Below, one piece after another: positions 8,837 through 37,775 of a stretch of DNA of 64,000 bases. Below the pieces are notes generated by a model, which was not told the origin of the DNA, searched no databases, and saw only the letters and a program-made list of their open reading frames with translations. Every line of letters begins with the position of its first letter. Position 1 is the stretch's first letter. Position numbers and translations under genes: made by a program. The stretch spans positions 124,001 through 188,000 of the IMG/VR virus record IMGVR_UViG_3300023184_004198; one strand, given 5' to 3'.

Positions 8837-9303
8837 GTGGGCCAGACCCAGCCCATGTTTTCAAGTTGATGTATCCATGAAAACACAGGTGCGTTGAACT
8901 GCAACTGCCATCGACCATTCCACCCCAGGTGTGTTTCCCCGGCTTGAACAGGATTCGGCTGGGGATTTTGCTGACTGTACCAGGGTTCAGGAAACACTGG
9001 CTCATAAGTGGCCAGCCAGTTGAAACGTGGCACATGTATGCTGTTGATTCTAATGGCACCAATGGTGATGTACTTGTCTAGCCCAAGGTGTGGTATGCAG
9101 TCTGAATCTTGTTTGTTCACAAAATCAACGATCACACTGTGTGGACCAGCAGTCAACAGTTGATCAAATCTCAAAGTAGTTGGCCGGCTTAGTTGCATGC
9201 GATCAACTGCATGATCAACGCCGTACATGATTTCAGGCACACTGCTGTGATATGTGGGCATGACATCTATTTCAATTTCAGTTTGATATTTTTTTGTATC
9301 CAT
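8833..9303 (-). CDS. Hypothetical protein coupled to the radical SAM gene
   Basis: Overlaps the 3' end of the radical SAM ORF; start at MDTKK. Confidence 0.65.
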
Positions 9304-10639
9304 ATTGTTCCAAGAAGTCAGTCCATTCTGGATAGTAGTCTCTGGCATCTAACTCGCAGTGGTGATCCCATTTGTTGAGCCAGCCAACCAGTTCTGTTTT
9401 GAGTGCTTCGGCATTGGGCAGTTCGGGCACTTGAATCATCTTGTACACACTGTTGAGTTCGTTGTACAGGTTAAGGGCATTCTTGCCATACTCTCTGCTT
9501 TGTGGCATGTCTGGATGTTGGTCTTGTTTGATATATGTACTCAATTTGTCAAGCACACGCTCGTATTCGGCAAAATAACTTTGTCTAATGTCCAAGGGCA
9601 ATGCGGCCGCCCGCAAATACGCAGGATTCCAGCAGGTGTTGTTTTCTGTGATGATGTTGCTGTCAAACATCCACTCCGTGAGTGCAGGAAATGTGGGCAC
9701 AGTGAGTGCAGTGATGGTGGGCTTCAAACACACGCAGAATGTTTCACTTTGATGCGACAAGAATGAACGGATGTTGTTCCAGTACAGTTCTTTGTCCAGA
9801 CCCTGGCGAATGTAAAAATTGTTATCTGACACAGACTCAATGCTGATGTCAATGTCTGCTCGGAAGAATCGAGCAAACTTTTCAGCAATCTCTCGACTGT
9901 ATATGGTGCCGTTGGAGATCAAACTCACAGCAAAGTCAGTGCGATCATGCTCAATAAAGAAATCCAAGAACTGTTCCAGTCTGGGACTCATAAAAGGCTC
10001 GCCGCCCATGAAGTGAACACTGCGCAGGTTCTTCATGCCCAGCAGTTCGTTCAGGAACCGTTGCCAAACTTCTTCATCATCCATCCAGTTCATTCTGGTA
10101 TGGTAGTCTTCTTTGCTGAGTATGCCCCAGATTTTGTATTTGGTTGCAATCTGTGTGCTGTAACTGGGGTTGCAATGTTTACAGTATAGGTTACATTCAT
10201 TGCCCATGTCAATATGCAGGTCCACAGGCATGCCATCGTAGTGCTCGTCCACGGCTTGACCAGATTGTTCACTGGTGAAAATATCATGGTGTGGGCTTTG
10301 TTCAAAACTTTGTTGAAAGTTTTGTTGGGTAAAGATAACACTGCGCCAATTGTGAGTGTTGCGATAACTGTCATTGCCATACTGTTCGTCTTGATAGCAG
10401 CCGGCACATTCAGCCAAAGGTTGGTCGCCCAGCATGGCAGCACGATAACGTTTCATTTTTTCACTGCGATACCACTCACGGATTGACGTGGTTTTGATAT
10501 TGGCTTTTACTTGTTCGGGTTGTTTGGCATAGCCATCGAACACAGGTGCTCGTTCACTGCAACACAGACCATAACTGCCGTCGTGGTAAAGTTGCATGTG
10601 GAACCAAGGCACATTACAGAATATTTTGGGATTTGGCAT
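9278..10639 (-). CDS. Radical SAM protein with N-terminal SPASM/Twitch-like domain
   Basis: CNLYCKHC, FMGGEP; N-terminal C..PW..CC..C..C; late hexamer 6 nt upstream. Confidence 0.9.
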   Translation of the reverse strand: MPNPKIFCNVPWFHMQLYHDGSYGLCCSERAPVFDGYAKQPEQVKANIKTTSIREWYRSEKMKRYRAAMLGDQPLAECAGCYQDEQYGNDSYRNTHNWRSVIFTQQNFQQSFEQSPHHDIFTSEQSGQAVDEHYDGMPVDLHIDMGNECNLYCKHCNPSYSTQIATKYKIWGILSKEDYHTRMNWMDDEEVWQRFLNELLGMKNLRSVHFMGGEPFMSPRLEQFLDFFIEHDRTDFAVSLISNGTIYSREIAEKFARFFRADIDISIESVSDNNFYIRQGLDKELYWNNIRSFLSHQSETFCVCLKPTITALTVPTFPALTEWMFDSNIITENNTCWNPAYLRAAALPLDIRQSYFAEYERVLDKLSTYIKQDQHPDMPQSREYGKNALNLYNELNSVYKMIQVPELPNAEALKTELVGWLNKWDHHCELDARDYYPEWTDFLEQYGYKKISN

Positions 10640-18387: not shown

Positions 18388-19179
18388 ATGAGGTATTTAA
18401 TATTGACCCTTTTGTTTGTTTTCAGCACTGCTCATGCACGTGAGCCCAGTGTCTACGTTTACAATGAAACCACAGACCGTGTGGAATACCAACGCAACTC
18501 AACAGAGTATCGTCCCATTGCCAGCATCACCAAGCTGATGACTGCCATGGTGGCCTTAGATCACAGCAAAGACCTGTTTCGTCAGCTGCCACTCAATACC
18601 ACGGTAAAAAGCAACTTGCTACGTGGCAACTACACTAGGCAAGAACTGTTCACGGCCATGCTGGTGCGAAGTGACAATGCAGCCGCAGAAACACTGGCTG
18701 CAGACTATCCTGGTGGTCGTAAAGAGTTTGTATGGCGCATGAATCAACAGGCCCGGGAATGGGGTATCAATGCTGTATTCCGTGACCCCACTGGCTTGGA
18801 CGCACACAACATGGCCACTGCTGGTGATGTTGGCACCATGGCTGGATATGCCGCGGGCTATTGGGTCATACGTGAAGCCAGTGTGAAAAAGACCGTGGCG
18901 TTTGAACGCAAGTTCAAAAAGAAATTACGCAAGATTCAACTCAACAATACCAACCGCCCATTGTTGATGGAGTTTGACGAAATCATTGCTTCAAAAACTG
19001 GATTTACCAATCCTGCAGGATATTGTGTTGCACTTGTGGTAGAACACAAAAAACAACGGCGAGTGATTGTGGTCTTGGGCGAACGAAACAAAAGCCGTAG
19101 AATAGACACTGTACAGGATATCATGTACAATCATGTGCTGGACCAAAATTTACAGGATCCCAAGTACATCAATAACTAA
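18388..19179 (+). CDS. D-alanyl-D-alanine carboxypeptidase/endopeptidase (peptidase S11)
   Basis: Signal peptide; SITK (SxxK), SDN (SxN) and KTG motifs. Confidence 0.92.
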   Translation: MRYLILTLLFVFSTAHAREPSVYVYNETTDRVEYQRNSTEYRPIASITKLMTAMVALDHSKDLFRQLPLNTTVKSNLLRGNYTRQELFTAMLVRSDNAAAETLAADYPGGRKEFVWRMNQQAREWGINAVFRDPTGLDAHNMATAGDVGTMAGYAAGYWVIREASVKKTVAFERKFKKKLRKIQLNNTNRPLLMEFDEIIASKTGFTNPAGYCVALVVEHKKQRRVIVVLGERNKSRRIDTVQDIMYNHVLDQNLQDPKYINN

Positions 19180-19421: not shown

Positions 19422-19497
19422 TGCTTTTTACTGACTTGACTAGATATTTCTGATCTGTTATACTAGACGCATTGTATTGCATAGTATAGGACATGAT

Positions 19498-19716
19498 ATG
19501 AATTCGTGGGATCGTGAAAATCTACATTTTATTCTAGATTCAGACGAGGAGACCTTGGCTGATTTTTATTCCTGGGCCACTGAAGATGACTTGACCTATG
19601 CGCTGGAACTGGTGCGCACTGCTATGTCTGAACTCATAGTGCAGGAAGCAGAACTCATGGATGAAGTTGAGGACTTGAGTGCGGCCCGTGGTGTATTAAA
19701 ACAATTTCAACTATGA
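19498..19716 (+). CDS. Acidic hypothetical protein
   Basis: Promoter and AGGA RBS upstream. Confidence 0.65.
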   Translation: MNSWDRENLHFILDSDEETLADFYSWATEDDLTYALELVRTAMSELIVQEAELMDEVEDLSAARGVLKQFQL

Positions 19717-20048
19717 GCCATCAGTTTCTCATAGTGTGGGACAATCTGGGTCTTGAGTGTTGCATAGACATCACTGAGGACCAACAACGCCGCATGTGGC
19801 AAACACTGCAAGGTGAGCCAGTGAGTGGAAGCACAATTCCCAACATCAATCACCTCATGCTACGTGCTAGATTCAACACTCACAGGCACTATGAGATCTA
19901 CACTTGCGAAGCAGTGGATGGTATCACTGCTGAGGATATTCGAGAAATGTTTGAAGCCAATCCGCAGAACGCGGCTGACACAATTCGACGCTTGGGACAC
20001 TGTATTCACAGTGATCGAGCAGAAAAACACAGGGTGTTGATCACCTAA
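19713..20048 (+). CDS. Conserved hypothetical phage protein
   Basis: WDNLGLEC...ARFNTHRHYEIY. Confidence 0.7.
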   Translation: MSHQFLIVWDNLGLECCIDITEDQQRRMWQTLQGEPVSGSTIPNINHLMLRARFNTHRHYEIYTCEAVDGITAEDIREMFEANPQNAADTIRRLGHCIHSDRAEKHRVLIT

Positions 20049-20055
20049 CTGAACG

Positions 20056-20245
20056 TTCTGCCTAATCAGCAGATAGTATGACCCGTACGATGAGAAGTGG
20101 TGTGATAGCCAAGGGTGGTAGTCTTCTTACCGAAAGGCCGCTGGCAATGCGAGAACGGACCCTGTCGGGAAGCGGGTGGAAGGTGTGTGAGATTTGCGGG
20201 GCAACCCAAGAGATGATACACTAAATTACCGCCGGGGGTCGCAGA
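20056..20245 (+). ncRNA. Candidate structured non-coding RNA, family unknown
   Basis: About 200-nt gap in otherwise dense coding; nested helices 20080-84/20236-40 and 20114-22/20225-33; GGG-gcaa-CCC hairpin. Confidence 0.55.
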
Positions 20246-20259
20246 GCATTAAGTATCAC

Positions 20260-20811
20260 ATGAACTCACAAATAATCAACGACTTTAAACAGTTTTCTTG
20301 GCAAAAAATCATAGACTACAGCAACAGCCTTGAAGACTTAAATGATGCCCAGTTAAGATTTGCCAAAGGATTGGCAATTGAAGCCGCGGTAGAAAAACTC
20401 AGCAACAGTGATCTTACCTATGTAGGAGAACCACACAGAGATTATCACTGGCCCAAACACAACGTTGATGTAGAACTTAAAAGCATTGTCAGTCAAAAAA
20501 TGTATGATCGCAATGGTCAACTCAAAGCACCTCCCAGTGTTCGTCTCAATAACAGTATGGGCAGTAACAGCAATCAACTAGATCCTGATACTATTGCAGA
20601 CATCATTGTCATAGTGTGTGCAGACGGAGCATTTGCAGCCAGCAGACAAGATGTTTTGGACACTGCATCACATCGTGGTGATGGATGGTATCTCCGGCTC
20701 AAACAAAATCAAATTGTAGAACTGTCCGGTCACATTGTACAACAAAACAAGTACGATCTTAATCTTGCTACCAAAGTTCGGGACGCAATCAAGGAAAGTA
20801 TATTGATTTAA
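20260..20811 (+). CDS. Putative PD-(D/E)XK restriction-endonuclease-like protein
   Basis: GLAIE...HRDY...VELK. Confidence 0.55.
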   Translation: MNSQIINDFKQFSWQKIIDYSNSLEDLNDAQLRFAKGLAIEAAVEKLSNSDLTYVGEPHRDYHWPKHNVDVELKSIVSQKMYDRNGQLKAPPSVRLNNSMGSNSNQLDPDTIADIIVIVCADGAFAASRQDVLDTASHRGDGWYLRLKQNQIVELSGHIVQQNKYDLNLATKVRDAIKESILI

Positions 20812-20871
20812 CTGGTTGACCAATAAAGATCAAAGTGCTATAATTTTAACATCTATTAACCACAAAGGACT

Positions 20872-22326: not shown

Positions 22327-22560
22327 ATGAGCTCACTACATCTCAATGCTAGACCTTGGGTAGTATTTGATCCTGCCAATGACGACCATCGTCGTTATTA
22401 CTATGATTTTGTATCCACTGGTACATGGGGTCGATGTCCGGTGCGTTTTGTAGTGCCTGATGCACACGGTGACTTGATCTCAATGATTCAACGCAGCCTG
22501 ATCAAGTGGTACGTGATCAACGAGTTCAAACCCAAACCCAAGCGCCGACGCACTGCATGA
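22327..22560 (+). CDS. Hypothetical protein
   Basis: RPWVVFDPANDDHRR..WGRCPVRF. Confidence 0.7.
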   Translation: MSSLHLNARPWVVFDPANDDHRRYYYDFVSTGTWGRCPVRFVVPDAHGDLISMIQRSLIKWYVINEFKPKPKRRRTA

Positions 22561-23891
22561 CAGATCTAACTCAAGCCACAGCCACAGAATTATTCCAACT
22601 ATACCAATCTGGTGCTGTGAGTCCTGTTGCTGTGGCCGAGCAAGTGTTGTCCAAAATCGAACGTGTAAATCCTGTGATCAATGCGTTTTGTTTTGTAGAT
22701 CCTGAGACTACAATGATTCAAGCACAGGATAGCGAACAACGCTGGCAACAAAATTGTCCACTGGGACCACTGGACGGAATACCTATAGCAGTCAAAGATT
22801 CAATACTTACACACGGCTGGCCCACTCTTCATGCAAGTCAAGCCATTGATCCTGATCAGTCTTGGGCAGAAGATGCACCAGCAGTGGCAAGATTACGTGA
22901 AGCAGGTGCAGTATTTGTGGGCAAAACTACAATGAGTGAATTTGGATTCAATGCACATGATTCAAATTCGTTACTGTATGGCAAGGTACACAATCCATGG
23001 AACCTTGCAAATTCTCCAGGTGGCAGCTCGGGAGGATCCGCAGTGGCAGTGGCCGCTGGTCTGGTTCCTATTGCACTGGCTTCGGATCTTGGAGGTAGCA
23101 TTGCAGTGCCAAGTGCTTGGTGTGGCGTGGTTGGCATCAAACCAAGCACCGGACTGGTGTCACAGTTTCCTACGGATGTTCTTGAACTTACCACTGTGGG
23201 ACTTATGGCAAGATCGTGTCAGGATCTTTCAACAGGCATGAACATAATCTCAAGATCCGATTGGCGTGACAGCACTGCATTTGCTGGCGGAAGTTTGGTG
23301 TTTGATTTAAATTCTCCATACACTTTAAAAAACAAAAAAATAGCATGCCTTGCACCCATTGACCAGTCAAACAATGTTGTTCAATATCTAATTGATCAAT
23401 CAGCCATGATCGATTTTGTTCAAATTGATGCCGGTGTCGCAACAGAAGTGTTTGCCAAATTACTAGATCCAAAATTATTACAACAGTGGTCAGATATCCC
23501 TGAATCTTTGCGGCAAAAAACTGGTCGTAAAATACAACAACTGGCGGTGATTGCACACAAAAAAGAAAAAACGTATTCTCATCTCTTAGAGCGCCACAAG
23601 TTAATTGCACACATGCGCAGATTTATGGAATCTTATGATTTGATTATTTGTCCTGCAACTGTAGACAGTGCAGACAACGCTAATAACATTGTGTCAGATG
23701 TTTCGCCTATGTCGGTATTTTTTTGTATGACCAAACAACCCACAGTGACTATGCCCATTGGTGTAGATTCAGATGGTGCCCCAATGGCTATAATGATAGC
23801 CGGTGCAGTATACAAAGATCACGATCTCATGTGTGCGGCGCACATGATTCAATCTGCTTTTCCCATTCCTGCTTGTCCGGTAATACTGTAG
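22557..23891 (+). CDS. Amidase signature family enzyme (GatA/AtzE-like)
   Basis: GPLDGIPIAVKD, PGGSSGGS, SDLGGSI (Lys-Ser-Ser triad). Confidence 0.92.
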   Translation: MTDLTQATATELFQLYQSGAVSPVAVAEQVLSKIERVNPVINAFCFVDPETTMIQAQDSEQRWQQNCPLGPLDGIPIAVKDSILTHGWPTLHASQAIDPDQSWAEDAPAVARLREAGAVFVGKTTMSEFGFNAHDSNSLLYGKVHNPWNLANSPGGSSGGSAVAVAAGLVPIALASDLGGSIAVPSAWCGVVGIKPSTGLVSQFPTDVLELTTVGLMARSCQDLSTGMNIISRSDWRDSTAFAGGSLVFDLNSPYTLKNKKIACLAPIDQSNNVVQYLIDQSAMIDFVQIDAGVATEVFAKLLDPKLLQQWSDIPESLRQKTGRKIQQLAVIAHKKEKTYSHLLERHKLIAHMRRFMESYDLIICPATVDSADNANNIVSDVSPMSVFFCMTKQPTVTMPIGVDSDGAPMAIMIAGAVYKDHDLMCAAHMIQSAFPIPACPVIL

Positions 23892-34706: not shown

Positions 34707-35001
34707 CAAACTAAAAGAACTTGTTGCTGAAGAAGGCAACCCTGAACTAAAACTACGAGTATTTGTACAAGGTGGAGGATGTTCAGGATTCAGTTATGGT
34801 TTTACATTTGATGAAGCTCGAAACGAAGATGATTTTGATTTCTCTTACGACACTGTGCAAGTTGTTGTAGATGCCATGAGCATGCAGTATCTACAAGGAT
34901 CAGAGATTGATTACAAAGAAGATATGATGGGCGCCAGCTTTGTGATCAACAATCCGCAAGCAGTCAGCACTTGCGGATGTGGATCAAGTTTTAGCATTTA
35001 A
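34681..35001 (+). CDS. erpA: A-type Fe-S carrier (HesB/IscA/ErpA)
   Basis: [28 protein letters not shown]. Confidence 0.92.
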
Positions 35002-37775
35002 ACTGTTTCACCATTTTCGCGGATGAACTCAGTGTCTCCGCCTACAATATCAAACACACGCATCCAGAAGCGTTCCACTGGTCGGAATATCCAACCCCAG
35101 CGGTTTTCGCCGTAATAGTATTTGCCATAGCATACCAAGGGATCTGCAAAAGTCTTTGTGACCAAGAACTTGAACACACGTGACTCACGCATGAGTGGCA
35201 CCAGTACTTCTGCCAGTCGGTAGTAGCCTCTGCGGTTTCGACCAGTCATCTTCTCATCACGGTATCTGCGTACCACTGAATCCATGGTGCCATCACCGTA
35301 GCGAGCTTCAAGCATGATGAAGCAGCAACCACCACCACCACCGCCGCCGCCACCTGCACTGCAACCACTGCCGGCTGAACTGCTGCAACTGCCTGCACTG
35401 CCGTCGCCACCAAATCCTGTTTGTCCCTTGTTATGAACCACAAGGTTGTTGGCTATGTAAGTGTTGTTGCCATCTAGTTTGAAATTATAGATTACTTGTT
35501 GTTGATCTTGATCGCTGTATTCTTCAATTGAGTCGATTACAACCCCCACGCCGTCTTCAGTTTCGACTACATCGCCCACGGCATATTTGCCCACGGTCAT
35601 TTTATACTTGGCGTAGGTCATTACAGGGTCAAAAGATCGCCAACCATGGCCACGTATCCATACTGGGTGATCGCTGGTCATAAATGGTGTGCTGCCGTTG
35701 AATGCCATCATGGTGGCACCGGTTTCGCCCAAAGTGGGTCGCAAAAACTCCAGCACGGTGTTGTGTGCGCCATCCATACCCAGCACAACTTCCCCTAGCG
35801 CAACATCTTCGATATTTTTGCGTGAACCGTCGGCCATGGTAATTTGTGTACCAGCCACAAAGCAACAACAAATACGAACAGTGTCATACACTTTTGGTGG
35901 GGGAGGAGGCAACGCTCTCAAATCCGGGGGTCTAGATACTCTGGCCCAATCATCTGATTGAGATATAAAATAGGGCACAAAAGTTCCAACCACCGGTTCC
36001 CATACCCCAGCTTCGTTTACATACATGCCGTCAATTTGTTTCCACTCGCCATCTACATTAACAAAAATAGTTTTAACTTCTTGCCAACCGCCGGCAGTTC
36101 TCACTCTAGGACCAAAACTGTTGAATATGAACACAGCGCCACCGTTGCCACCTTGCACCGAACCTGGCAGTCCACCTTGTCCTACTCCGGGCAACAGGTT
36201 ATGATATGGACCAGTAAAAGCCACACCCGCACCATTGGGACTTAATGCTGTGCCAGTGGCAATTGGATTTAGATAACTTACTCCTACACCACCGGCTTGT
36301 CCGTAAGCATCACCTTCGCTACTGTAACCATTTTTTCCAGCGCCGCCAGGACCGCCAGGACCGCCTGCCCCTCCACCGCCACCATCTTTGTAGAAATCGC
36401 CTTGATTTTGGCCAACTTGTCCATTGGAAATTCCAGCGGCAGTCTGTCCACGTGGTCCTGGTGCATTGGATTCAGAAATACCAGTATCACTGTTGCCAGC
36501 ACCACCGCCACCAGCGCCACCTACTGCAACTGCTATCAATGTTTCATTTGGTGTTTGTGGATTTAGTACCAATGTGGTACAACCGCCAGACCCACCACCA
36601 CCACCTGAACTGCCCACAGGACCTGCCAGTCCACCAGTGGCGCCTGACCAACTTTTACTAATGACAATGGCCACACCTGCACTTGGCAAAGCTGTTTGAC
36701 TAAATGAAGCAAAGAATGAAATTGTGTGATAGCCTTGACTTACTGTAACATTTGTAGTGTATGCTGTGCTGTATGAATCAGAACCCGGTGTGGTATACAC
36801 CACAACACCATCAATGCTGAGTGTGGCTGTGTTGGCAGCAGCCATCTCAACTTGATAAGACCCAGTGTAAGGAAAATACACATTGGCATAGGTTCTAGCG
36901 CATGAACTGGCTTTGAAATTTTGTTCCCACATACCAAAGTCCAACATCAAATTGCTGTAAATATTGTCAGGCTCTGTGTCAGGATTTGGCACGTATAAAG
37001 GCGGACTGGCTACAGCACTTCTAGTATCAAATACATTTCTCACCAAACCATATCCACCCAACCCTGCATTGCCAGTTGTGGCTATGGTAAGTCCTACTCC
37101 AAATACGCCGTATGTGGCTCCAACATTGGCATTGGCAAGAATACGTATGGTATGATTACCCGGAGTTATAGTGCGTACAAATTGCACACCGCCTGACTCT
37201 TGTGTCTTCCAACTGTCAACACCGGATTCCAACAATACTTCGCCGTCAAGAAAAACTGTGGCTTGGTAATACGCTGCTAATCTAAAAACATAAGTGATAG
37301 AAAAAGGAAAAAATACAGTAAATGATTGATCAAAGTTTAAAGTATTGGCTAAACTGGTGGTACTGCCATCCAATGCTGTGCCAGTGTTCCACACACCAGT
37401 GTCATTCAAAAATTTTGACCAGCGAGCAACCGTGGTAGCACTGGCACGAGGCAGTGCTGTGGTTCTTCCAATAGGAACAGCGGTGCGTGTGTTAAAAATA
37501 CTGTCTTCGTAAGAATTGGCTATGCTACTGTTTCGGCCACTGCCACCAGCAGCGCCCACTGCAATCTCAATCACATCACCAGGATTAACAGTAAACGACG
37601 CTGATACATATCCACCACCAGAGCCTGAGCCACCTTGACGACTCCCGTCGCTGCCGCCGGAACCTCCGCCTGCACCCCAGAGATAAGCCTGTACAGTTTG
37701 TGAATATCCGGCAGCAGGCAAAGTCAGGGTTTGCCGAGCGTTGATCATGCTCAAAGGTCTAATTAGTGTGGTCAT
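34998..37775 (-). CDS. Gly-rich fibre/adhesin with two PA14-like modules, Hint domain and C-terminal CFI-box domain
   Basis: WGAGGG repeats; CFVAGT...VVHN (Hint, 35430-35864); GGCCFIM C-terminal domain. Confidence 0.8.

What the first reader, a model, noticed from the sequence alone, without database searches (positions are those of the whole stretch)
20056..20245. Candidate novel ~190-nt structured RNA just upstream of a nuclease-like gene
Seen: a non-coding gap that looks GC-rich. Pairings found by eye are TCTGC/GCAGA (20057-72), GACCC 20080-84 with GGGTC 20236-40, GGTGGTAGT 20114-22 with ATTACCGCC 20225-33, CTTC/GAAG, GGTGTGT/ATACACT, and GGG-gcaa-CCC. It matches no riboswitch or ribozyme I recognise. 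Inference: a ribozyme, riboswitch, or the RNA partner (antitoxin or guide) of the downstream PD-(D/E)XK protein.
Basis: partly seen in the sequence, partly recalled or inferred. Interest (0 to 1): 0.7.

Follow-up and report, generated by a model that had tools for sequence, protein, structure and literature searches.

The report
New structured RNA of jumbo phages
The gap holds one intact copy of a previously undescribed ~200-nucleotide folded RNA gene that more than 120 uncultivated freshwater giant phages carry, usually as an extra gene inside their tRNA clusters, and it is unrelated to the nuclease gene next to it here.

Summary
Window 20051-20250 (+ strand) is a non-coding, G-rich gap that holds a full-length copy of a conserved structured RNA (189 bits to a covariance model built here).

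There were none in 50,697 GenBank phage records. An exact-pattern scan of the core across 185,579 bacterial and archaeal genomes gave only a chance hit. No Rfam 15 family matches.

Eight helices are supported by covariation: 98.8-99.2% of cells pair, against 37-52% in slid controls, and 18-19 pairs carry compensatory changes. Two have the wrong partner.

In 107 of 123 loci the RNA lies in a tRNA island, and all 1,609 tRNAs there are on its strand. It often starts 2-6 nt after a tRNA's CCA and ends 4-12 nt before the next tRNA. Only the window and one relative have the downstream gene beside it. That gene is a PD-(D/E)XK restriction-endonuclease-like protein, and 7 of 8 of its homologue loci lack the RNA.

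Most likely this is a trans-acting stable RNA released by tRNA-end processing, as for T4 rnaC/rnaD, GOLLD and ROOL. Its function is unknown. A self-cleaving ribozyme role is not excluded.

The parts
20051..20250 (+). Whole conserved RNA gene, about 200 nt, running from GAACGU to GCAGAGCAUU.
   Evidence: R1 matches 20074-20247 full length at 189 bits. The 5' leader and H1 are conserved in alignment A1. In relatives the same unit is bounded by tRNAs.
20051..20056 (+). 5' leader GAACGU. The CG is invariant. In tRNA islands it follows a tRNA's CCA after 2-6 nt.
20057..20073 (+). H1 hairpin, UCUGC / GCAGA.
   Evidence: RNAalifold on A1. Its five pairs carry 3-20 double changes each.
20076..20088 (+). 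H2 hairpin, GUAUG / CGUAC, with a conserved triloop ACC (20081-83).
   Evidence: helix 1: 100% and 99.5% paired; CG/GC swaps. The loop is nearly invariant.
20089..20098 (+). Conserved single strand GAUGAGAAGU. Its U (20091) covaries with a base of the H3 loop.
   Evidence: (UG 49, GC 5, UA 4, CG 3).
20098..20111 (+). H3 hairpin, UGGU / GCCA.
   Evidence: helix 2: all four pairs have double changes.
20113..20119 (+). Nearly invariant GGGUGGU. Candidate docking strand for the ACC(C) of the H2 loop and the ACC of the H4 loop (a double pseudoknot). Inferred.
   Evidence: Only three informative variants exist: L033 changes all three partners together, L091 changes one pair, and L032 gives a wobble.
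20121..20138 (+). H4 hairpin, GUCUU / AAGGC. The loop CUUACCGA carries an ACC (20129-31) that is conserved in all but L033 and L091.
   Evidence: helix 3: four of five pairs have double changes.
20139..20151 (+). H4b, CGC / GCG, with the 7-nt loop UGGCAAU. The loop looks T-loop-like by eye; this was not tested.
   Evidence: pair CG 53 / UA 9 in A3, and CG 33 / UA 8 in A4.
20152..20157 (+). Conserved junction AGAACG.
20158..20175 (+). 5' strand of the long-range helix: GACCCU, then CG, then GCGG, with bulges GU and GGAA.
   Evidence: helices 5-7: 100% paired; AU/UA swap at 20159-20239.
20229..20240 (+). 3' strand of the long-range helix, CCGCCGGGGGUC.
20176..20181 (+). Conserved internal loop, 5' side, GUGGAA. 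The 3' side is AAAUUA at 20223-28.
20182..20222 (+). P8 helix, GGUGUG / UACACU, closing a variable-length arm. The arm is nearly absent in the shortest relatives and well over 100 nt in the longest (whole-element length 178-286 nt).
   Evidence: helix 8: five of six pairs have double changes.
20241..20250 (+). Conserved single-stranded 3' tail GCAGAGCA. In tRNA islands the next tRNA starts 4-12 nt later.
19436..19464 (+). Context: promoter-like site (TTGACT-17-TATACT) ahead of ORFs 19477-19716 and 19713-20048. It probably drives transcription through the RNA here.
   Evidence: Consensus match only.
19713..20048 (+). Context: upstream 111-aa ORF, a lineage core gene with no known family.
20260..20811 (+). 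Context, not part of the RNA: 183-aa PD-(D/E)XK restriction-endonuclease-like gene.
   Evidence: In relatives it is followed by an N6_N4 methyltransferase, which is absent here.

Best explanation
Window 20051-20250 (+ strand) is a gene for a compact, pseudoknot-prone, ~200-nt non-coding RNA. It belongs to a family so far found only in uncultivated freshwater jumbo phages.

Shown:
- The fold has five short hairpins followed by a long irregular helix that closes a variable arm.
- The fold is strand-specific.
- Most genomes carry one copy.
- The usual home is a tRNA island, co-oriented with the tRNAs and spaced from them like another tRNA gene.

Inferred:
- The RNA is cut out of the polycistronic tRNA precursor by the host's tRNA-end enzymes. 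RNase P would cut at the 5' end of the next tRNA. 3'-end processing would cut after the CCA of the previous tRNA.
- It then acts in trans as a stable RNA. Its invariant purine-rich single strands and loops (GAUGAGAAGU, GGGUGGU, UGGCAAU, AGAACG, GUGGAA, GCAGAGCA) would contact a partner in tRNA or translation metabolism.
- This would match how the other orphan RNAs of phage tRNA islands are thought to be made (T4 rnaC/rnaD, GOLLD, ROOL).

In the window's sub-lineage the ~200-nt unit has moved out of the island. It now sits between a 111-aa core gene and a restriction-endonuclease-like gene, and would be transcribed as the tail of the upstream operon. It does not regulate or partner the nuclease gene.
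For: Family and structure:
- 74 + 50 loci match model R1 at 100-202 bits.
- 98.8% and 99.2% of cells pair, against 37-52% with slid partners.
- 19 and 18 pairs carry compensatory changes.
- 0 of 500 shuffles reach the observed value on any measure.
- G-U pairs are frequent (for example GU 58/62, UG 40/61, GU 28/61), so the fold exists only on the + strand.

Not coding: open frames are scattered over all frames, and lengths mod 3 split 24/22/17.

Context:
- 107 of 123 loci lie within 300 nt of a tRNA.
- All 1,609 tRNAs in these loci are on the RNA's strand.
- 75 loci abut an upstream tRNA and 45 abut a downstream tRNA at 4-20 nt.
- The ordinary tRNA-tRNA spacer in the same islands has a median of 8 nt.

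Copy number: 1, 1, 2, 1, 1 in five records, four of them 97-100% complete.

Position-independent: in G005, close kin of the window's phage, the RNA is at 66.8 kb and the 33-tRNA island is at 160-172 kb.

Expression hint:
- At least 10 metatranscriptome assemblies from at least 6 studies hold 40-70% of its words, including libraries of only 39-79 million letters.
- In three true RNA runs, only 20092-20259 of window:19000-21500 is covered.

Analogy: T4 rnaD starts 1 nt after tRNA-Arg, and rnaC follows 6 nt later. GOLLD and ROOL are often near tRNA islands and have unknown function (PMC12286853). GOLLD and tmRNA occur in the same islands as this RNA.
Against: - No RNA ends were seen. The public runs are held as contigs only.
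- One RNA-library contig joins a tRNA 3' end to the RNA's 5' part, which could be precursor or contaminating DNA.
- Flank coverage is a weak control, because the flanks are less conserved than the RNA.
- No partner is known. Ro60/TROVE is absent.
- The function is entirely inferred from context.
- The candidate pseudoknots rest on three variant sequences, and these do not agree on the register.
- All carriers may belong to one phage lineage, so the many copies are not many independent origins.
Confidence: 0.6

Rival explanations
1. Self-cleaving or other catalytic RNA that helps to process tRNA-island transcripts. For example, it could cut at its own 5' end to free the upstream tRNA's CCA end, as HDV-like theta ribozymes do in gut phages.
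For: - 75 of 123 copies begin 2-6 nt after a tRNA's CCA.
- About 70 invariant positions and a pseudoknot-prone core are typical of catalytic RNAs.
- Theta ribozymes set a precedent for ribozymes beside phage tRNAs (PMC10879173).
Against: - The CCA-to-RNA spacing matches ordinary tRNA-tRNA spacers, so it is not special.
- 48 copies have no abutting upstream tRNA, and 12 loci have no tRNA at all. The window is also in this class: no tRNA in it or in its 212-kb record. The RNA is equally conserved in all of these.
- No hit to any Rfam ribozyme family, even at E<=10.
- 200 nt is four times the size of theta ribozymes.
Confidence: 0.15
2. One reading: a cis-acting riboswitch or leader, or an RNA antitoxin or guide, that serves the downstream PD-(D/E)XK gene.
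For: - The RNA ends 13 nt before the ATG at 20260.
- The gene is nuclease-like.
- One relative, L215, has the same RNA-gene arrangement.
Against: - More than 120 copies have other neighbours, mostly tRNAs.
- Close relatives L002, L003, L041, L052, L060 and L062 keep the RNA but have lost the gene. There a sigma-70-like promoter follows the RNA.
- 7 of 8 loci with homologues of the gene lack the RNA.
- No terminator or sequestering hairpin follows the RNA.
- No repeats.
- No variable guide-like end. The 3' tail is invariant.
Confidence: 0.03
3. A tRNA-sensing RNA that binds the 3' NCCA end or the elbow of tRNAs, working like a T-box but in trans, or as a switch between two pairings of ACCGCC.
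For: - The T-box signature AGGGUGGNACCGCG (from my own knowledge) appears here in split form: GGGUGGUA at 20113-20 and AAUUACCGCC at 20224-33, plus a second GGGUGGAA at 20174-81.
- The UGGCAAU loop is T-loop-like (by eye).
- Home is in tRNA islands.
- ACCGCC could pair with either GGUGGU or GCGG.
Against: - The Rfam T-box model does not match.
- L033 replaces GGGUGGU with AGGACCU, with matching changes in its own two loops. This fits an internal pairing, not pairing to the invariant tRNA CCA.
- L053 and L033 are compatible only with the GCGG/CCGC pairing.
- No specifier loop or terminator is present.
Confidence: 0.1
4. Not an RNA at all: a small protein-coding gene, or a DNA-level site such as an origin, packaging site or recombination site.
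For: - ORFs of 48 and 51 aa overlap the gap.
- 24 of 63 copies have some stop-free frame over more than 90% of their length.
Against: - The open frames fall in five of the six frames, mostly on the C-rich minus strand.
- Length differences are not multiples of three.
- Compensatory changes and strand-specific G-U pairs are present.
- The element is present in RNA libraries.
- It is always co-oriented with the tRNAs.
Confidence: 0.02

Closest known systems
T4 small stable RNAs rnaC and rnaD (species 1 and 2)
   Same: Non-tRNA stable RNAs of 119-139 nt encoded inside a phage tRNA cluster. They lie on the tRNA strand, 1-6 nt from their neighbours. Their function is unknown (own knowledge).
   Different: No sequence or structure similarity: R1 scores at most 2.4 bits on them with filters off. 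The new RNA is larger, has far more invariant positions, and keeps its conservation when it lies far from the tRNA island.
GOLLD (RF02032) and ROOL RNAs
   Same: Ornate orphan RNAs of phages and prophages, often near tRNA islands, with unknown function (PMC12286853). GOLLD occurs in the same islands as this RNA (L029, G004).
   Different: GOLLD and ROOL are 400-800+ nt and form multimeric cages. The new RNA is about 200 nt, has no Rfam match to either, and is more widespread in this lineage: 5 of 5 records against 1 of 5 for GOLLD. Oligomerisation was not tested.
HDV-like theta ribozymes next to phage tRNAs
   Same: Structured RNA placed directly 3' of phage tRNA genes (PMC10879173).
   Different: Theta ribozymes are minimal (about 50-60 nt) nested double pseudoknots. 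No HDV-family match here. Many copies are not next to a tRNA. Cleavage was not tested.
T-box riboswitch
   Same: Shares the short motifs GGGUGG(U/A)A and ACCGC, and a link with tRNA biology.
   Different: The motifs are split and used in other pairings. No Stem I or specifier, no terminator, not a 5' leader of a gene, and no match to the Rfam T-box model.

Membership tests
Any Rfam 15 family (4,227 models, including riboswitches, ribozymes, RNase P, 6S, SRP, Y RNA, raiA, GOLLD, ROOL) | Score at or above the family's gathering threshold, or a consistent sub-threshold match. | tested here: not met
   No hits at gathering score in the window. At E<=10 there was only noise. Eight other copies gave only tRNA-driven weak hits (sX4, tmRNA_permuted) that extend from the adjacent tRNA.
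tRNA / tmRNA | Cloverleaf or tRNA-like domain recognised by ARAGORN or Rfam. | tested here: not met
   ARAGORN finds none in the window or in the whole 212-kb record. Real tRNAs and tmRNAs are found beside other copies, not over them.
Riboswitch / cis-regulatory leader | Conserved aptamer upstream of a recurring set of regulated genes, with an expression platform (terminator or RBS-sequestering helix). | tested here: not met
   Downstream neighbours are tRNAs, promoters or unrelated genes. No terminator-like site follows the RNA.
RNA partner of the adjacent nuclease (type III antitoxin, guide or omega-RNA-like) | Co-occurrence of the RNA with the protein gene. | tested here: not met
   The RNA occurs without the gene in more than 120 loci. 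The gene occurs without the RNA in 7 of 8 loci.
RNA partner of the adjacent nuclease (type III antitoxin, guide or omega-RNA-like) | Tandem repeats (ToxI-like) or a variable guide segment. | tested here: not met
   No tandem repeats. Both ends of the RNA are conserved, and only internal arms vary.
T-box riboswitch | Match to the T-box model; Stem I with a specifier; antiterminator/terminator switch in a 5' leader. | tested here: not met
   No Rfam T-box match. No terminator. Not a leader. Only short motif resemblance.
HDV-like / theta self-cleaving ribozyme | Nested double-pseudoknot fold that begins at the cleavage site directly after the tRNA. | tested here: inconclusive
   No match to Rfam HDV-type models. 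Position after CCA holds in 75 of 123 loci, with ordinary spacer lengths. The fold found here is a series of hairpins, not that topology.
HDV-like / theta self-cleaving ribozyme | Site-specific self-cleavage. | not testable with these tools
   Needs an in vitro assay or end-resolved RNA-seq. The runs are available only as contigs.
GOLLD / ROOL (orphan RNAs of phage tRNA islands) | Homology to the family model. | tested here: not met
   No match over the element. GOLLD is found elsewhere in the same islands.
GOLLD / ROOL (orphan RNAs of phage tRNA islands) | Location in phage tRNA islands. | tested here: met
   107 of 123 loci.
T4 rnaC / rnaD | Sequence or structure similarity. | tested here: not met
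   R1 with filters off scores at most 2.4 bits over rnaC and rnaD.
Bacterial Y RNA (YrlA) with Ro60 | Ro60 (TROVE) gene in the genome, and a terminal stem plus tRNA-like module. | tested here: not met
   TROVE is absent from 5 of 5 RNA-bearing records, four of them 97-100% complete. No YrlA match over the element. No closing terminal stem.
PD-(D/E)XK restriction endonuclease (for the neighbouring 183-aa protein) | D...(D/E)XK catalytic signature, alpha-beta-beta-beta-alpha-beta core fold, and a partner methyltransferase. | tested here: met
   D61, E72 and K74 are invariant in 38 homologues. The AF2 model has pLDDT 90.9. Top fold matches are NhoI, DpnI, Eco15I-N, PvuII and NaeI, at E 7e-4 to 5e-2 and TM 0.28-0.50, which is moderate. 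An N6_N4 methyltransferase follows the gene in relatives but not in the window. No catalytic test was done.

The most novel reading that the evidence does not exclude
This is a new functional class of phage RNA. It would be a ~200-nt pseudoknotted catalytic or tRNA-recognising RNA (or an RNA-only assembly) that giant phages carry with their tRNA sets to process, sense or protect tRNAs during takeover of host translation. It would have no counterpart among known ribozymes, riboswitches or ribonucleoprotein RNAs.
Probability: 0.25. Interest if true: 0.9.

Novelty: categorically new. Interest (0 to 1): 0.75.

Why it matters
Orphan structured RNAs with this much conservation and covariation are rare. 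About 70 positions are invariant and eight helices covary. Past examples (RNase P, glmS, GOLLD, ROOL, OLE, raiA) turned out to be catalytic, regulatory or architecturally unprecedented.

This one is carried by genomes of 340-525 kb next to full tRNA sets, tmRNA and sometimes GOLLD. It survives relocation away from the tRNA island. That makes it a candidate piece of the machinery by which giant phages remodel host translation or resist tRNA-targeting defences.

It is small enough (about 200 nt) for direct probing, cleavage assays and cryo-EM. There are more than 100 distinct natural sequences to guide such work.

"Categorically new" here means a new RNA family with no detectable relative. It does not mean a demonstrated new mechanism.

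Tried and rejected
1. Single-sequence folding gives no signal (z = -0.89).
2. Two search patterns were mis-designed.
   - One search used N{1,2} where N{0,1} was needed. It still netted 20 copies.
   -, the only metagenome scan, had one N too many. It gave 29 chance hits and 0 model matches. So I have no count for metagenome contigs.
3. The genome-contig scan gave one chance hit in a high-GC Mycobacterium, with no model match and no tRNAs.
R1 therefore lacks the leader and H1.
5. Protein-coding reading: rejected.
6. My interim idea that the 183-aa gene was an insertion was wrong. The ancestral order is orf111, orf183, methyltransferase, and the RNA is the inserted piece.
7. The search for related loci found no relatives of the 183-aa protein in viral contigs, but the protein search found 72 clusters. 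The first result was a limit of the method.
8. The single-sequence AF2 model of that protein was useless (pLDDT 37.5). The alignment-based model was good.
9. The Atlas search of the 111-aa protein gave nothing.
10. Ro60/TROVE is absent.
11. T4 rnaC and rnaD are unrelated.
12. No match in GenBank phages.
13. Weak tmRNA_permuted and sX4 hits are explained by the adjacent tRNA's 3' half.
14. The palindromes in the leader (GAACGUUC) and internal loop (UAAUUA) are not conserved well enough to argue for dimerisation. Complex prediction was not used, because it gives no verdict for RNA.

Full report
**What is at the coordinates**

The window is part of a 212,614-base IMG/VR virus record that CheckV rates 61% complete. 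The genes run tightly on the + strand:
- An S11 D-Ala-D-Ala carboxypeptidase at 18388-19179.
- ORFs of 79 and 111 aa, ending at 20048.
- A 211-nt gap.
- A 183-aa ORF from the ATG at 20260.
- A strong promoter-like site at 20816-20844.
- A 381-aa ORF.

The gap is richer in G+C than its surroundings (0.52-0.57 against about 0.42) and is G-skewed on the + strand. It contains no tRNA or tmRNA and no tandem repeat. No Rfam 15 family matches at gathering score or at E<=10. Folded alone, it is no more stable than shuffled sequence (z = -0.89 on +, -0.01 on -).

**Relatives**

Homologues of the upstream 111-aa gene led to three phage contigs with a conserved copy of the gap. I then scanned IMG/VR with short core patterns:
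- The first pattern found 53 contigs.
- A second, mis-designed pattern added 20.

A covariance model (R1; 181 positions, from H2 to the 3' end) matches exactly one site in each of 74 + 50 loci at 100-202 bits. The window's copy is full length at 189 bits. There are 103 distinct sequences.

Other collections gave nothing:
- No match in 50,697 GenBank phage records.
- The exact-pattern scan across 185,579 prokaryote species gave one chance hit in a Mycobacterium, with no model match.
- My single metagenome scan was wasted on a faulty pattern.

**Structure**

RNAalifold and pair counts agree on eight helices.
- On the first set (62 distinct rows), 98.8% of cells form standard pairs, against 37-52% when the 3' partners are slid by 1-3 columns. 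Nineteen of 35 pairs show changes on both sides. The covariation score is 0.474, against at most 0.095 for the slid controls. No shuffle out of 500 reaches any observed measure.
- The second set, which was not used to build the model, repeats this: 99.2% paired, 18 pairs with double changes, score 0.369 against at most 0.060.
- H1, which lies outside R1, also covaries.
- Abundant G-U pairs place the fold on the + strand only.

In window coordinates the layout is:
- Leader GAACGU, 20051-56.
- H1, 20057-73.
- H2, 20076-88, with loop ACC.
- Single strand GAUGAGAAGU.
- H3, 20098-111.
- GGGUGGU, 20113-19.
- H4, 20121-38, with ACC in its loop.
- H4b, 20139-51, with loop UGGCAAU.
- Junction AGAACG.
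- A long-range helix pairing 20158-75 with 20229-40.
- An internal loop, GUGGAA against AAAUUA.
- P8, 20182-87 with 20217-22, closing a variable arm.
- A conserved tail GCAGAGCA.

Arm lengths vary. Some copies also carry an extra 30-50-nt insertion after GGGUGGU.

Four are right: H1, H4 (in a slightly different register), P8 and its tip. Two are mis-partnered.
- GGGTC 20236-40 pairs with the second GACCC at 20158-62. Pair 20159-20239 is standard in 61/61 sequences and swaps AU with UA.
- The CCGC of ATTACCGCC pairs with GCGG 20172-75. Two independent compensatory changes support this.

**Candidate tertiary pairs (inferred)**

- The H2 loop ACC(C) and the H4 loop ACC could each dock on the tandem GGGU-GGU strand.
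- L033 changes the strand to AGGACCU and both loops to matching sequences.
- L091 changes one pair (GGC with GCC).
- L032 gives a wobble.
- The three variants do not fix the register.
- A further covarying pair links the U of GAUGAGAAGU with the H3 loop (UG 49, GC 5, UA 4, CG 3).

**Not coding, not a DNA site**

Stop-free frames occur in five of the six frames, mostly on the C-rich minus strand. Element lengths mod 3 split 24/22/17. With the strand-specific G-U pairs, this excludes a conserved ORF and argues against a duplex-DNA site.

**Context, which decides the interpretation**

- 107 of 123 loci have the RNA within 300 nt of a tRNA gene.
- All 1,609 tRNAs predicted in these loci are on the RNA's strand.
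- The median locus holds 13 tRNAs and the largest holds 30.
- In 75 loci the conserved leader starts 2-6 nt after an upstream tRNA's CCA.
- In 45 loci a tRNA starts 4-20 nt after GCAGAGC.
- Ordinary tRNA-tRNA spacers in the same islands have a median of 8 nt.
- The flanking tRNAs are of many kinds.

So the RNA is packed like one more tRNA gene. The same islands hold GOLLD, betaproteobacterial-type tmRNA and a group I intron, but nothing from Rfam over the element.

Five carrier records of 225-525 kb, four of them 97-100% complete, have 1, 1, 2, 1 and 1 copies and 23-33 tRNAs each in the four records that were searched for tRNAs. None has Ro60. Only one has GOLLD.

**The window's own lineage is the exception**

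Twelve loci, and separately the window itself with its whole 212-kb record, have no tRNA nearby. In the close relative G005 the RNA is at 66.8 kb and the tRNA island is at 160-172 kb.

Synteny gives the history.
- In more distant kin, the 111-aa gene overlaps the start of the 183-aa gene. An overlapping N6_N4 DNA methyltransferase follows, and no RNA is present (L216-L219; L220-L222 also lack the RNA).
- In the window and L215, the ~200-nt unit sits exactly between the 111-aa gene's stop codon and the 183-aa gene.
- In L002, L003, L041, L052, L060 and L062 the RNA remains but the 183-aa gene is gone. A TTGACA...TATAAT promoter follows the RNA there.

The RNA is therefore a self-contained module. 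It was inserted here, and it has no obligate link with the nuclease gene.

**The neighbouring gene**

- Thirty-eight homologues keep H59, D61, E72 and K74.
- The alignment-based AF2 model is confident (pLDDT 90.9).
- Its best fold matches are PD-(D/E)XK restriction endonucleases (NhoI, DpnI, Eco15I N-domain, PvuII, NaeI). The scores are moderate: E 7e-4 to 5e-2, TM 0.28-0.50.
- In relatives the gene is paired with a methyltransferase. In the window it is not.

**Expression**

At least ten metatranscriptome assemblies from at least six studies hold 40-70% of the element's sampled words. They include libraries of only 39-79 million letters.

In three true RNA runs laid on window:19000-21500, only 20092-20259 is covered, at 99-100% identity. 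The flanking genes get nothing.

This fits an abundant, conserved RNA, but it is not proof.
- The flanks are less conserved than the RNA, so they are a weak control.
- Only contigs are held, so no ends can be read.
- One contig joins a tRNA 3' end to the RNA's 5' part, which could be precursor or DNA.

**How it most likely works**

Shown: a conserved, strand-specific, intricately folded RNA gene, normally embedded in co-oriented tRNA arrays.

Inferred: it is transcribed with the tRNAs. It is released by RNase P at the next tRNA and by 3'-end processing of the previous one. It then accumulates as a stable RNA that acts in trans through its invariant single strands and loops.

This is the arrangement of T4 rnaD and rnaC. 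rnaD lies 1 nt after tRNA-Arg, and rnaC follows it after 6 nt. It is also the arrangement of GOLLD and ROOL. None of these is homologous to the new RNA.

In the window the RNA would be the 3' part of the operon that starts at the promoter-like site at 19436-64. What it binds or does is unknown.

**Novelty**

No Rfam family, cultured phage or prokaryote genome carries it. I found no paper describing it. I therefore treat it as a new RNA family in the known niche of phage tRNA islands.

I label it "categorically new" at the level of RNA family, because its function is open. All carriers may belong to one jumbo-phage lineage of freshwater. The tmRNA type hints at betaproteobacterial hosts (inference).

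Noticed in passing
L044:9558-9719 (also L013, L140, L175, L010, L040, L042, L011 and others): A second conserved non-tRNA block of about 160 nt lies in the same tRNA islands and on the same strand. It is found in 37 of 123 loci, at varying positions relative to the first RNA. It has a terminal stem of about 20 bp (UAUAGUCAAGCA.../...UGCUUGACUAUA) and inner hairpins that change in a compensatory way. MFE z = -5.55, and there is no Rfam match. It is probably another undescribed RNA gene.
   Followed up: partly
L029:311-775 and G004:362284-362748: GOLLD RNA (RF02032, 189-204 bits) lies in the same tRNA islands, but in only 1 of the 5 large carrier records.
   Followed up: partly
L010:13913-14302 and L044:4087-4531: The phage tRNA islands carry a betaproteobacterial-type, permuted tmRNA gene. 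This hints at Betaproteobacteria as hosts.
   Followed up: no
L070:6439-6638: A group I intron (57.5 bits) lies inside the tRNA island of one carrier.
   Followed up: no
window 20260-20811: A PD-(D/E)XK restriction-endonuclease-like gene. Its closest fold matches include the methyl-directed enzymes NhoI and DpnI. In relatives it is followed by an overlapping N6_N4 DNA methyltransferase, but here it stands alone, directly before the promoter-like site at 20816-20844.
   Followed up: partly
L215:497-545: In this relative the 111-aa gene upstream of the RNA is reduced to an 8-codon stub. The stub joins the gene's first and last codons (ATG AAT CAT CAG GTG TTG ATC ACC TAA).
   Followed up: no
G003:119584-119771 and G003:424216-424391: The largest carrier (525 kb, rated 100% complete) has two copies of the RNA, on opposite strands and 300 kb apart.
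   Followed up: no
window 34998-37775 (- strand): A 925-aa ORF with a Hint (intein or homing-endonuclease-associated) domain at residues 638-737, which suggests an intein-bearing gene.
   Followed up: no
window 18388-19179, 22506-23891, 9278-10639: The phage encodes an S11 D-Ala-D-Ala carboxypeptidase, an amidase-family protein, and a radical-SAM/SPASM protein.
   Followed up: no
L012, L023, L048, L049, L084, L070 and others, between GGGUGGU and H4: A subset of copies carries an extra insertion of 30-50 nt with one or two hairpins at one fixed point of the RNA. This is typical of a peripheral expansion in a structured RNA.
   Followed up: no
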